Assembly: GCF_006345805.1 (NCBI RefSeq)
Contig: NC_043004.1
Location: forward strand, 79,360,001-79,424,000
Length of the DNA stretch: 64,000 nt
Reading direction: 5' to 3'
DNA from: Octopus sinensis
Lineage: Eukaryota
In this document: positions 20,301 through 23,300 of the stretch, piece by piece
How the letters are laid out: each line of letters opens with the position of its first letter
Position numbering within the stretch: position 1 is the stretch's first letter
The notes under the pieces: generated by a model
Databases searched by the model: none
The model's input: only the letters and a program-made list of their open reading frames with translations
Told to the model about the DNA's origin: nothing
Program-made: the position numbers and the translations under genes

Positions 20301-23300
20301 CACAAGTGTCACAAGAAGGAAGGTATGCACAGGTGGACTGACTACGTCCCAGGTAGGGGCCATGGTGGACTGACTACGTCCCACATTGTTTTATATATAT
20401 ATATATATATATATATATATATATAATATATATATATATATATATATATATATATAATATATATATCATCATCATCATCGTTTAACGTCCGCTTTCCGCG
20501 CTAGCACGGGTTGGACGGTTCGACCGGGTCTGGGAAGCCAGGGGCCGCTCCAGGCTCCAGTCTGAATCTGGCAGAGTTTCTACGGCTGGATGCCCTTCCT
20601 AACGCCAACCACTCCGTGAGTGGATTGGGTGCTTTTTACGTGCCACCTGCACAGGGGCCGGAGGGTCCGGCATCGTCACGATCGGTTCGAGCATTTTAAC
20701 GTGTCAGCGGCACGGGGGCAACGAGGTCCGGGGTACTTTGGGGATCCAGGGTGGTGTTAGCAGTGGACATTCGTTATCGTCACTGAGTAACGTAATTAGG
20801 TAGAGGAAAGAAATACAGATATTCTAGAGTTGAGTTGGGGAGGGGGGGTCCAGTTGAGGCGGGTAGTATAGGGGAGCAACCAGTGGGGAAGGCTGGGGTA
20901 AGGAGGAACGATGGCAGGAAGGATTGGTGTAGGTTCGAAAGAAATAAAAACGTAGGATATTACGAGGCGGAAGGGTACTAAAAGGGGGATGGTCGGATTG
21001 AGGCAGTGTCAGGAGGAAGCAAAGATCGGTGGGCAGTTGAGCTATGGCGCTAGCAGCTTGTCTTTTCACAGTGAAAGCATATGAGGAGAAGGGGTAGTGG
21101 GGGGAGGAGGAGGGAGTAGGGCGTATCCGGTGTAGATGGTGAGAACAGGGTATACTGGTATTGGTGGTGGCGGTGAGAACAGTGTTCACCGGTATTGGTG
21201 GTGGCGGTGAGAACAGTGTTCACCGGTATTGGTGGTGGCGGTGAGAACAGTGTTCACCAGTATTGGTGGTGGCGGTGAGAACAGTGTTCACCGGTATTGG
21301 TGGTGGGGGTGAGAACAGTGTTCACCGGTATTGGTGGTGGGGGTGAGAACAGTGTTCACCGGTATTGGTGGTGGCGGTGAGAACAGTGTTCACCGGTATT
21401 GGTGGTGGCGGTGAGAACAGTGTTCACCGGTATTGGTGGTGGGGGTGAGAACAGTGTTCACCGGTATTGGTGGTGGGGGTGAGGACATTGTTCACCGGTA
21501 TTGGTGGTGGGGGTGAGGACAGTGTTCACCGGTATTGGTGGTGGCGGTGAGAACAGTGTTCACCGGTATTGGTGGTGGCGGTGAGAACAGTGTTCACCGG
21601 TATTGGTGGTGGCGGTGAGAACAGTGTTCACCCGTATTGGTGGTGGCGGTGAGAACAGTGTTCACCGGTATTGGTGGTGGCGGTGAGAACAGTGTTCACC
21701 GGTATTGGTGGTGGCGGTGAGAACAGTGTTCGCCGGTATTGGTGGTGGCGGTGAGAACAGTGTTCACCGGTATTGGTGGTGGGGGTGAGAACAGTGTTCA
21801 CCGGTATTGGTTGGTGGCGGTGAGAACAGTGTTCACCGGTATTGGTGGTGGCGGTGAGAACAGTGTTCACCGGTATTGGTGTGGCGGTGAGAACAGTGTT
21901 CACCGGTATTGGTGGTGGCGGTGAGAACAGTGTTCACCGGTATTGGTGGTGGCGGTGAGAACAGTGTTCACCGGTATTGGTGGTGGGGGTGAGAACAGTG
22001 TTCACGGTATTGGTGGTGGGGGTGAGGACAGTGTTCATCGGTATTGGTGGTGGCGATGAGAACAGTGTTCACCGGTATTGGTGGTGGGGGTGAGGACAGT
22101 GTTCATCGGTATTGGTGGTGGCGGTGAGAACAGTGTCACCGGTATTGGTGGTGGGGTGAGGACAGTGTTCATCGGTATTGGTGGTGGCGGTGAGAACAGT
22201 GTTCACCGGTATTGGTGGTGGGGGTGAGGACAGTGTTCATCGGTATTGGTGGTGGGGGTTGGGGGGGCGGGCGCACCGCCAATGGCGGAAAGATGGGAAA
22301 AGATAGGATTACGGCTTGAGGTAGCCTAAGGTTAAATTTCGTAGAGAGAGAGATAGGAAAGATAAATCAAGTTATGGCGAAGGCTTGAAAGTAGCCTAAA
22401 AGGTTAAATTTTCGTAGCGAATGAGATGGGTAAGACGAATCAAGTTATCAATGTATGAATAAACGTAGTAACAACGAATAAAAATAGTAAGATAAATTTT
22501 TAAGAACTTGCTGCGGGCATCGACCGGGAGTTGAAATTGAAGAAGAAAGTAAGTTGAATTGGGAGTTTAAATTGCAGAATCGTAATGGTAATGGCGATTT
22601 TCAAGTTTTAGCATAAGAAGAAGAAGAGGAGGAAAAAAAGACCGCCAATGGCGGAAAGATGGGAAAAGATAGGATTACGGCTTGAGGTAGCCTAAGGTTA
22701 AATTTCGTAGAGAGAGATAGGAAAGATAAATCAAGTTATGGCGAAGGCTTGAAAGTAGCCTACACATACATGTATATAGTTTATAGATTTGAGACAACCA
22801 TTCTCTGCATAGAATACACTTCGTAGTGCTCAAGAGATTGAACTTGAGCAGGTAGACAAGTAGAAGTAAGGACAAACAAGTTATATATAAATAAATATAT
22901 ATATATATATATATATTTCGTTTTTGGATTTGGTTTGCAAAATTCTTTATATGAGTTCGTGTGTTGAAGCATATTCTGTTGTGTCTGGGGAGAGTCATTT
23001 TCTTTTTGTGCCTTATGATTTAACACACTCACTTGTAAAATTTCCACTTATTTCTTATTCTTATTTTCCTAAAATTTTCGTTGCATCTAGCAACCTTTTC
23101 CGGTGAGTATGTTACATTATAAGCCACAAAAAGAAAATGACTCTCCCAAGACACAACAGTATATATGTATATATATATATATATATATATATAATTGAGA
23201 AAAAGAGCATGTTCTTGAAGCCGAGAATTTGAACTTACAGAGACAATATTTACATATCACCTGAGGAAACACAACTAGAGCTCATAATGCAAGGAAACAA

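What the first reader, a model, noticed from the sequence alone, without database searches (positions are those of the whole stretch)
20467..22762. SVA-like composite retroelement: duplicated 5' unit, GC-rich VNTR and RTE tail
Seen, on the minus strand 5' to 3': a 123-bp unit present twice, about 32 copies of a 34-bp VNTR, a pyrimidine-rich spacer of about 400 nt, then an RTE-type 3' end with (GAT)n. The whole block keeps its CpGs while neighbouring repeats have lost theirs, and it has no RT ORF. The 12245-13173 copy links this tail family to an RTE reverse transcriptase. Inference: a young, non-autonomous passenger mobilised by RTE that carries its own minisatellite, paralleling the hominid SVA layout. 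It sits sense to the host in the intron just before the first ORD exon. No target-site duplication could be resolved because the left flank is (AT)n.
Basis: partly seen in the sequence, partly recalled or inferred. Interest (0 to 1): 0.7.

Follow-up and report, generated by a model that had tools for sequence, protein, structure and literature searches.

The report
SINE-tailed minisatellite insertion in an intron
A young, non-coding block of about 2.3 kb in an intron of an oxysterol-binding-protein gene joins a 33-copy minisatellite to the 3' end of an abundant short retroelement; it looks like one retro-insertion, but no second copy could be found, so an SVA-like mobile family is not shown.

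Summary
The anatomy is real. On the minus strand there is a 122/124-nt unit present twice (98% identical), a 34-nt x 33 array, a pyrimidine-rich spacer of about 400 nt, then a retroelement tail ending in (GAT)5 and abutting (TA)38.

Every module keeps its CpGs (observed/expected 0.8-1.6, against 0.31 for the rest of the window). Nothing in it encodes a recognisable protein. It lies sense in the intron about 1.1 kb upstream of the first ORD exon (19217-19375).

New here:
- Only the last ~275 nt are retroelement-derived. They match a SINE-like family that normally has its own head and 62-69-nt array.
- The other ~2 kb is one G-poor compositional unit, unrelated to that family and unique in the window.
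- The claimed RTE link fails: at 12245-13173 the RT fragment stops exactly where a full-length SINE head begins, which indicates a nested insertion.
- The tail carries a deeply conserved ~30-nt core and a terminal stem-loop.

Best reading (about 0.55): one recent LINE-mediated insertion of a chimeric RNA. Whether it belongs to a multi-copy SVA-like family or is a one-off chimera cannot be tested, because no searchable collection holds this genome.

The parts
20392..20466 (.). (TA)38 microsatellite directly 3' of the tail; probable target sequence
   Evidence: TRF. The sister tail copy at 37621-37767 also sits inside a (CA)n(TA)n(GA)n microsatellite with TA on both flanks.
20467..20481 (-). (GAT)5 terminal simple repeat
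   Evidence: All tail copies in the window end in (GAT)n-like repeats.
20467..20653 (-). Tail module (~187 nt) shared with the window's SINE-like family. It holds the conserved core at about 20610-20570 and a terminal nested stem-loop (CGUCC/GGACG around CCGUG-CUAG-CGCGG).
   Evidence: blastn found 15+ copies at 68-97% identity. The core occurs in 18 unrelated metagenome contigs. The terminal ~50 nt are 85-89% identical in a foreign ENA contig, L020. The same fold is predicted in three sequences.
20654..20740 (-). About 1.5 degenerate copies of the family's 62-nt internal repeat; 5' limit of SINE homology
   Evidence: Local alignments to three independent arrays fall in the same register. The scores are only at the edge of the shuffle range: 25-30 against a null maximum of 28.
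20741..21137 (-). G-poor (10.8% G), 69% pyrimidine spacer; unique in the window; CpG observed/expected 0.80
   Evidence: A 121-aa ORF within it has no Pfam hit and no homologue.
21138..22259 (-). 34-nt minisatellite of 33 units. The first 7 units alternate two variants (68-nt higher-order period), 13 units are identical, and the last unit decays into the spacer. Each unit is an imperfect palindrome.
22260..22274 (-). Short C-rich linker between the 5' region and the array
   Evidence: Read directly from the sequence.
22275..22398 (-). Second copy of the 5' unit
   Evidence: 98.4% identical to 22641-22762.
22399..22640 (-). Sequence between the two unit copies. With the units it forms a 364-nt period x 1.34, itself built of ~70-nt sub-repeats. 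It contains a T7 run and a T5 run.
   Evidence: CpG observed/expected 1.98.
22641..22762 (-). First copy of the 5' unit; start of the CpG-rich, G-poor block
22763..22881 (-). 119 nt of uncertain status: either the 5' end of the element or flank. It ends in a degenerate TA/TG simple sequence next to the unit.
   Evidence: It holds only 1 CpG, compatible with both background and element. It is unique in the window.
22882..22916 (.). (TA)n; alternative 5' boundary and possible other half of a split TA target
   Evidence: TRF. It starts where an older repeat family ends in ...AAATATA.

Best explanation
The block is the product of one recent, LINE-mediated (target-primed reverse transcription) insertion of a non-coding chimeric RNA into a (TA)n microsatellite in the intron.

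The RNA's 3' ~275 nt come from the abundant SINE-like family of this genome. They comprise 1.5 degenerate 62-nt repeats, a deeply conserved ~30-nt core, a terminal stem-loop and (GAT)n. That 3' end is the part a 'stringent' LINE reverse transcriptase recognises, so it supplies mobility in trans.

The 5' ~2 kb is an unrelated, G-poor, pyrimidine-rich body: ~70-nt sub-repeats with a 364-nt partial duplication, a 34-nt minisatellite and a spacer. It rode along as a passenger.

The length, together with internal T7 and T5 runs, argues for RNA polymerase II transcription or read-through, not polymerase III.

Shown: the anatomy, the shared tail, CpG integrity of every module, the G-poor unity of the body, and the absence of coding capacity. 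Inferred: arrival as a single event, the polymerase, and the LINE partner, whose clade is unknown. Undetermined: whether the source was a master copy of a multi-copy SVA-like family or a one-off chimera.
For: - Tail identity, and (GAT)n abutting (TA)n, are the same as in the 96.6%-identical sister tail at 37621-37767, which is flanked by TA on both sides.
- Each module independently exceeds the background CpG level: background observed/expected 0.31, modules 0.80-1.6, P from 1e-3 to 5e-7. Among the tail copies measured, only the sister copy reaches a comparable 0.90; the others are at 0-0.56.
- Spacer, VNTR and 5' region share 10.5-13% G on the sense strand, against 30% in the tail and 25% in the SINEs.
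- There is no TA tract or other target remnant at the internal junction near 20740. Both candidate 5' boundaries (22762 and 22881) abut TA-type simple sequence.
- The terminal ~50 nt plus (GAT)n are conserved at 85-89% in a contig of another organism, with the same predicted nested stem-loop.
- The SINE family itself already has a head / variable 62-69-nt array / tail layout. Module exchange among mollusc SINEs is documented (PMC4758252).
Against: - No second copy of the 5' unit, VNTR or spacer exists in the window or in any collection scanned.
- The target-site duplication is unresolvable because the flanks are low-complexity.
- Homology of 20654-20740 to the 62-nt repeat is statistically marginal.
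- CpG richness could instead reflect a germline-unmethylated patch.
- No LINE with this tail was identified.
- Assembly correctness across 1.1 kb of near-identical repeats could not be checked.
Confidence: 0.55

Rival explanations
1. Two or more independent young events merely abut. A 5'-truncated copy (~275 nt) of the SINE family inserted into (TA)n directly next to the 3' end of an unrelated young repeat that carries its own minisatellite, in the same orientation.
For: 5'-truncated tails of the same young subfamily do insert on their own into (TA)n, as at 37621-37767. The body shows no similarity to the SINE family. Nesting of repeats is common in this window, for example the SINE inside an RT fragment at about 13030.
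Against: It requires two young insertions at exactly adjacent positions in the same orientation, leaving no TA units between them. The body has no terminal inverted repeats, no coding capacity and no other copy in the window, so its own mobility is equally unproven.
Confidence: 0.22
2. Local origin. An intronic sequence expanded in place into a minisatellite with flanking duplications, within a germline-unmethylated patch that therefore keeps its CpGs. A SINE fragment then landed beside it.
For: The last array unit decays gradually into the spacer, the array has a higher-order structure, and the 5' region is a partial tandem duplication. All are signs of growth in place. The palindromic unit favours slippage.
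Against: The unique, non-amplified parts (spacer, and inter-unit segment 22399-22640) are also CpG-rich against a 0.2-0.3 background on both sides. The CpG-rich block ends exactly at the retroelement tail. The G-poor composition differs sharply from the flanking intron.
Confidence: 0.13
3. The block is a member of a multi-copy, currently active SVA-like family. This is a sub-case of the best explanation.
For: All the evidence for the best explanation applies. In addition, the only two CpG-intact, young-subfamily tails in the window are this element and a 5'-truncated fragment that could equally derive from it. All four SINE copies with a head or 62-nt array are older, at 78-85% identity.
Against: There are zero further copies of any body module in 64 kb that contain at least 15 tails. 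Nothing was found elsewhere, though the source genome is not searchable.
Confidence: 0.3
4. Assembly artefact: a chimeric join or mis-sized array.
For: 1.1 kb of 95%-identical 34-nt units and a 98% duplication are hard to assemble.
Against: Junctions are clean. The array has ordered variant structure rather than collapsed identical units. Flanks on both sides are ordinary intron with correctly ordered exons.
Confidence: 0.04

Closest known systems
SVA / LAVA / PVA / FVA composite non-LTR retrotransposons of hominoids
   Same: It is non-coding and has several modules of different origin. It has an internal GC-rich VNTR and a 3' module borrowed from another retroelement that supplies trans-mobilisation. 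It is too long and too T-run-rich for polymerase III, and it is intronic in sense orientation. The SVA description comes from PMC3287187 and my own knowledge.
   Different: The tail is a specific ~190-nt SINE 3' end with a stem-loop and (GAT)n, implying sequence-specific recognition by a LINE. SVA instead uses a poly(A) tail and L1. There is no 5' hexamer repeat and no Alu-like or LTR-derived part. Multi-copy status is not shown.
The window's own SINE-like family: head, 62-69-nt tandem array, conserved core, (GAT)n tail. Examples are 20391-19718, 13030-12249, 25724-26123 and 59579-59142.
   Same: The last ~187 nt are 78-85% identical to those full copies and 96.6% identical to the truncated copy at 37621-37767. 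The next ~87 nt resemble the 62-nt repeat. The overall logic is the same: 5' part, tandem array, tail.
   Different: The head (GGACGTAGTCAGTCC...GAAGACCTGTTGAGGCAAGTG) is absent. The array unit (34 nt) and the whole 5' 2 kb are unrelated in sequence and differ in base composition.
V/Vhc-domain SINEs of molluscs, arthropods, cnidarians and fish (Ogiwara 2002; Matetovici 2016, PMC4758252)
   Same: The tail contains a ~30-40-nt block, GGTTGGCGTTAGGAAGGGCATCCAGC(C/T)GTA(G/A)AA. It recurs within otherwise unrelated sequence in 18 metagenome contigs, behaving like a deeply conserved SINE central domain. From memory it resembles the fish V-domain core.
   Different: Identity with the published Vhc block could not be checked, because the figures and supplements are not held. 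The published partners of Vhc SINEs are CR1-clade LINEs, not RTE.
Chimeric retrocopies made by LINE template switching or read-through (U6/L1 and mRNA/L1 chimeras; 10.1101/2025.02.02.635956)
   Same: A retroelement 3' end is joined to an unrelated RNA in a single insertion, with a single copy expected.
   Different: The known cases are L1/poly(A)-based. Here the 3' partner is a SINE tail and the 5' partner carries a minisatellite.

Membership tests
SVA-type composite VNTR retrotransposon (as a kind) | Several modules of distinct origin, the 3' one derived from another retroelement | tested here: met
   The 3' ~275 nt match the SINE family. The body is unrelated to it and compositionally distinct. 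The origin of the body is unknown.
SVA-type composite VNTR retrotransposon (as a kind) | Internal VNTR | tested here: met
   34 nt x 33.1 copies, 95% matches. Length polymorphism was not tested.
SVA-type composite VNTR retrotransposon (as a kind) | Dispersed multi-copy family with collinear modules | not testable with these tools
   The body modules are unique in the window. There were 0 hits in the metagenome, prokaryote-genome, viral and protein collections. None of these appears to contain the source organism.
SVA-type composite VNTR retrotransposon (as a kind) | Hallmarks of LINE-mediated insertion: LINE/SINE-type 3' end, target-site duplication, 5' truncation series | tested here: inconclusive
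   The 3' end is present. The TSD is unresolvable because both flanks are TA-type simple sequence. A 5'-truncated sister tail exists, but it cannot be assigned to this element rather than to the SINE.
SVA family proper (hominid, L1-mobilised) | Poly(A) tail, Alu-like and SINE-R modules, CCCTCT hexamer | tested here: not met
   The tail is (GAT)5 after a specific stem-loop, and none of those modules is present. The resemblance is an analogy only.
RTE-mobilised non-autonomous element | 3' end shared with an RTE-clade LINE | tested here: inconclusive
   The only RT/tail juxtaposition (13186-12249) is a full-length SINE nested against a 150-nt RT fragment. The clade of the RT fragment was not determinable: Pfam gave no hit for the 52-aa fragment. 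Related LINE-bearing contigs L019-L021 do not end in this tail.
The window's head/62-nt-array/tail SINE family | Family head at the 5' end | tested here: not met
   There is no similarity between 22260-22881 or the spacer and the head.
The window's head/62-nt-array/tail SINE family | Family tail with conserved core and (GAT)n | tested here: met
   78-85% identity to the copies with head or array, and 96.6% to the truncated copy at 37621-37767.
tRNA/5S/7SL-derived SINE (polymerase III element) | Polymerase III-type head and no internal terminators | tested here: not met
   ARAGORN found no tRNA in the window. Rfam gave no relevant hit. The sense strand has T7 and T5 runs.
MITE / non-autonomous DNA transposon with internal array | Terminal inverted repeats | tested here: not met
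   The end-to-end inverted alignment is no better than shuffles.

The most novel reading that the evidence does not exclude
This is one copy of a lineage-specific, currently active composite family in an invertebrate (probably a cephalopod). A polymerase-II-transcribed, G-poor, minisatellite-bearing RNA has captured the 3' recognition module of a SINE, and so hijacks a sequence-specific LINE. It would be an independent, non-L1, non-poly(A) reinvention of the SVA strategy, and it would be the present carrier of the young tail subfamily.
Probability: 0.28. Interest if true: 0.6.

Novelty: new variant of a known kind. Interest (0 to 1): 0.38.

Why it matters
If the composite proves to be a family, the SVA-style route (a VNTR-bearing passenger acquiring a retroelement 3' end) would also arise with sequence-specific, stem-loop-recognising LINEs outside mammals. 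It would also give a length-polymorphic, recently active insertion marker in a lineage where transposon activity is under discussion. If it is a one-off chimera, it is still a clean example of a SINE tail mobilising about 2 kb of foreign RNA. In either case it places 2.3 kb of pyrimidine-rich, sense-oriented sequence about 1.1 kb upstream of a splice acceptor of an ORP9-like gene. As it stands, this is a well-described single locus, not a demonstrated new element class.

Tried and rejected
1. Looking for other copies.
- The spacer ORF as a protein probe gave nothing by word search. By full HMMER it gave only two low-identity, multi-stretch matches that I take to be compositional.
- Exact look-ups of two element ORFs found no record.
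- The VNTR and 5'-unit DNA patterns gave 0 hits in the metagenome, prokaryote-genome and viral collections.
- The protein search appears to list only proteins up to about 1.75x the query length (maxima of 349 aa for a 199-aa query and 84 aa for a 49-aa query). The absence of own-species hits therefore says little.

2. Orthologous empty site. This was not obtainable: the host-gene search returned only proteins at or below 71% identity.

3. LINE partner. Contigs carrying the closest RT fragments (L019-L021) do not end in this tail. L020 holds only a minimal tail element upstream of its RT fragment.

4. VNTR unit as a derivative of the family's 62-nt repeat, the 5' region or the spacer. No alignment scored above shuffles.

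5. Polymerase III head. No tRNA was found and there was no relevant Rfam family.

6. DNA-transposon reading. There are no terminal inverted repeats. By eye, neither strand shows Helitron-type 5'-TC / CTRR-3' ends.

7. Covariation support for the tail stem-loop from the 14-copy alignment. I abandoned this because the apparently compensatory sites are CpGs decaying in dead copies, so they are not evidence of selection.

8. Checking the conserved core against the published Vhc block. The figures and supplements are not held, and a literature search for the core string found nothing.

9. Source organism. From memory the repeats look like octopus SINEs, but no tool confirmed this.

Full report
**Anatomy**

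Read on the minus strand, the block runs as follows.
- A 122-nt unit lies at 22762-22641.
- 242 nt of unique sequence follow, at 22640-22399.
- The unit recurs at 22398-22275 (124 nt, 98.4% identical, spacing 364-366).
- A short C-rich linker comes next.
- A 34-nt array lies at 22259-21138. TRF reports 33.1 copies, 95% matches and score 1997, by far the strongest array in the window.
- A pyrimidine-rich stretch runs down to about 20654.
- A ~187-nt tail ends in (GAT)5 at 20467 and abuts (TA)38 at 20466-20392.

The 5' region is really a 364-nt period repeated 1.34 times, and is itself built of ~70-nt sub-repeats. In the array, the first seven units alternate between two variants, giving a 68-nt higher-order period. 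Thirteen units are identical, and the last unit decays into the spacer. Each unit is an imperfect palindrome, and three units fold far better than shuffles (z = -3.6 and -4.3).

**What the tail is**

blastn of the parts against the window shows that only the last ~187 nt recur. There are at least 15 copies at 68-97% identity. The spacer, array and 5' units are unique in the window.

Four copies define the normal carrier of this tail: 20391-19718, about 13030-12249, about 25724-26123 and 59579-59142. That carrier has a head (two 32-nt repeats, then ...GCATACCTTCC...GAAGACCTGTTGAGGCAAGTGAAA). It then has 3-7 copies of a 62-69-nt tandem repeat, then the tail. This SINE-like family therefore already has a '5' part, variable array, tail' layout.

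In the block under study, sensitive local alignment extends homology about 87 nt further upstream, to about 20740. That stretch resembles 1.5 degenerate 62-nt units. The scores are marginal, but three independent references align in the same register. Upstream of 20740 nothing resembles the family.

Inside the tail, the string TGGCGTTAGGAAGGGCATCCA occurs in 18 metagenome contigs whose flanks are otherwise unrelated. One of them (L010) also ends in (GAT)n. So this string is a deeply conserved SINE core. It behaves like the V/Vhc central domain described for molluscs, arthropods, cnidarians and fish (PMC4758252). The sequence match to that published domain rests on my memory only.

The terminal ~50 nt plus a long (GAT)n recur at 85-89% identity in a contig of another organism, L020. 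The same nested stem-loop is predicted there and in two window copies. The energy z-score is significant only for L020. This terminal module is the kind of 3' end that sequence-specific LINE reverse transcriptases recognise (established knowledge for stringent LINE/SINE pairs).

**The RTE claim**

At 13186-13031 there is a ~150-nt RT fragment (...[34 protein letters not shown]). It stops exactly where the SINE-like unit's own 5' end begins. The neighbouring copy at about 20380 starts at the same position, directly after (TA)n. That is a nested insertion, not a LINE with this tail.

The closest RT fragments in public data lie on contigs that do not end in this tail. The clade of the RT fragment could not be assigned, because Pfam gave no hit for the 52 aa. 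The partner LINE is therefore unknown. For Vhc-type SINEs the published partners are CR1-clade elements (PMC4758252).

**Evidence that the block is one young arrival**

- *CpG content.* The window without the block has CpG observed/expected 0.31, and the flanking intron 0.21-0.29. The modules stand at 0.88 (tail), 1.30 (62-nt-like part), 0.80 (spacer), 0.85 (array) and 1.42 (5' region).
- *Significance.* Counting only non-amplified sequence, the excess over background is significant for the spacer (P = 1.4e-3). The same holds for one 5' period (P = 5e-7) and for the SINE-derived part (P = 5e-7).
- *Comparison with other tails.* Among the tail copies measured, only this one and the 96.6%-identical, 5'-truncated copy at 37621-37767 keep their CpGs (0.88 and 0.90). 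The others are at 0-0.56.
- *Base composition.* The three body modules share an unusual sense-strand composition of 10.5-13% G. The tail has 30% G and the SINE copies 25%.
- *Target.* The sister copy sits inside a (CA)n(TA)n(GA)n microsatellite with TA on both sides. Here the 3' flank is (TA)38, and both candidate 5' boundaries abut TA-type simple sequence...TATATACATGTATGTGTA at 22763, and (TA)n at 22882-22916.
- *Internal junction.* No TA tract or other target remnant lies at the junction near 20740.

Together these points favour a single target-primed insertion of an RNA made of a G-poor, VNTR-bearing body fused to the SINE 3' ~275 nt. The exact 5' end stays open. The 119 nt at 22763-22881 hold one CpG, which fits either reading.

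**Transcription and coding**

The sense strand carries a T7 run (22639) and T5 runs (22484, 20950), and has no AATAAA or ATTAAA. No tRNA-like head or relevant RNA family is present. A 2.3-kb polymerase III transcript is therefore implausible. Polymerase II transcription, or read-through of a host transcript, is the likelier source (inference). The longest ORF is 121 aa, and four of the element's ORFs, that one included, have no significant Pfam match.

**Host context**

tblastn with ORP9/10/11-like proteins maps the exons on the minus strand. The exon at 19217-19375 matches Pfam Oxysterol_BP profile positions 2-43 and is the first ORD exon. A likely upstream exon lies at 30427-30651 and carries an FFAT-like [10 protein letters not shown] motif.

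**What could not be settled**

The defining test of an SVA-like family is other collinear copies with target-site duplications. That test needs the source genome, and the genome is not in any collection available here. DNA scans and protein-level probes for the body were all negative. The host-gene search returned nothing above 71% identity. The protein tool also seems to cap hit length at about 1.75x the query, so these negatives carry little weight.

Within the window, at least 15 tails and no further body copy show that the composite, if it is a family, is much rarer than the SINE. One weak hint points the other way. The only two young-subfamily tails in the window are this element and a truncated fragment, whereas all four SINE copies with a head or 62-nt array are older.

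**Verdict**

- The 'young, non-autonomous, VNTR-carrying passenger on a retroelement tail' is the best-supported reading, at about 0.55.
- Within that reading, a multi-copy SVA-like family (about 0.3) and a one-off chimera are about equally likely.
- The rivals are abutting independent insertions (about 0.2), a locally grown minisatellite in an unmethylated patch (about 0.13), and an assembly artefact (about 0.04).
- The resemblance to SVA is an analogy of architecture and strategy, not membership. The tail is a specific stem-loop plus (GAT)n, not poly(A).

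Noticed in passing
window 19718-20391 (-), 12249-13030 (-), 25724-26123 (+), 59142-59579 (-): A SINE-like family has an internal 62-69-nt tandem array of variable copy number: about 4.3, 7 and 3.3 copies in three of the copies and, by spacing, fewer in the fourth. It also has a duplicated 32-nt motif in its head. So the ordinary carrier of this tail is itself a minisatellite-bearing retroelement.
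   Followed up: partly
window ~20570-20610 (-); loci L001-L018: The 21-nt core TGGCGTTAGGAAGGGCATCCA, usually extended to about 30-40 nt ending in ...GCYGTAAAA, occurs in 18 metagenome contigs with otherwise unrelated flanks. L010 also ends in (GAT)n. It looks like a deeply conserved SINE central domain (V/Vhc-like).
   Followed up: partly
L020:5335-5543: In another organism (ENA ERZ25068966) there is a minimal element. It consists only of the terminal ~45 nt of this tail, preceded by an inverted copy of its first 13 nt, and followed by a long (GAT)n run of about 40 units.
   Followed up: no
window 22971-23164: A 69-nt-arm hairpin (87% complementary) lies between two (TA)n tracts. One arm plus the loop recurs at 33948-34075 (90.7%). 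It gives a sub-threshold Rfam match to MIR4208 (67.5 bits against a gathering score of 140). It is probably a MITE-like repeat.
   Followed up: partly
window 21138-22259: Each 34-nt unit contains an imperfect palindrome, GGTGAACA-C-TGTTCTCACC. Its TGTTCT / AGAACA half-sites recall steroid-receptor-type half-sites (from memory). Arrays of units fold into long hairpins on both strands.
   Followed up: partly
window 30427-30651 (-), 19217-19375 (-), 17668-17829, 16172-16252, 14652-14837, 11991-12089, 10041-10190, 8897-8989, 7318-7449, 5258-5371: These are exons of an ORP9/10/11-like oxysterol-binding-protein gene on the minus strand. They include an FFAT-like motif ([10 protein letters not shown]) and the EQVSHHPP signature. 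The best database identity was only 58-71%, so the species itself was not retrieved.
   Followed up: partly
window 13031-13186 (-): A ~150-nt reverse-transcriptase fragment is sandwiched between a different tRNA-like-looking repeat upstream and the SINE head downstream. This is a three-layer nest of repeat fragments.
   Followed up: partly
window 32795-33058 (-): An open stretch reads ...[47 protein letters not shown]. From memory this looks like a mariner/Tc1-type transposase C-terminus, but Pfam gave no hit at E <= 0.01.
   Followed up: partly
window 57175-57358; 3500-3932; 41455-41944: There is a long (GT)~93 microsatellite, and two ~240-nt tandem duplications that appear to be dimers of another SINE-like repeat.
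   Followed up: no
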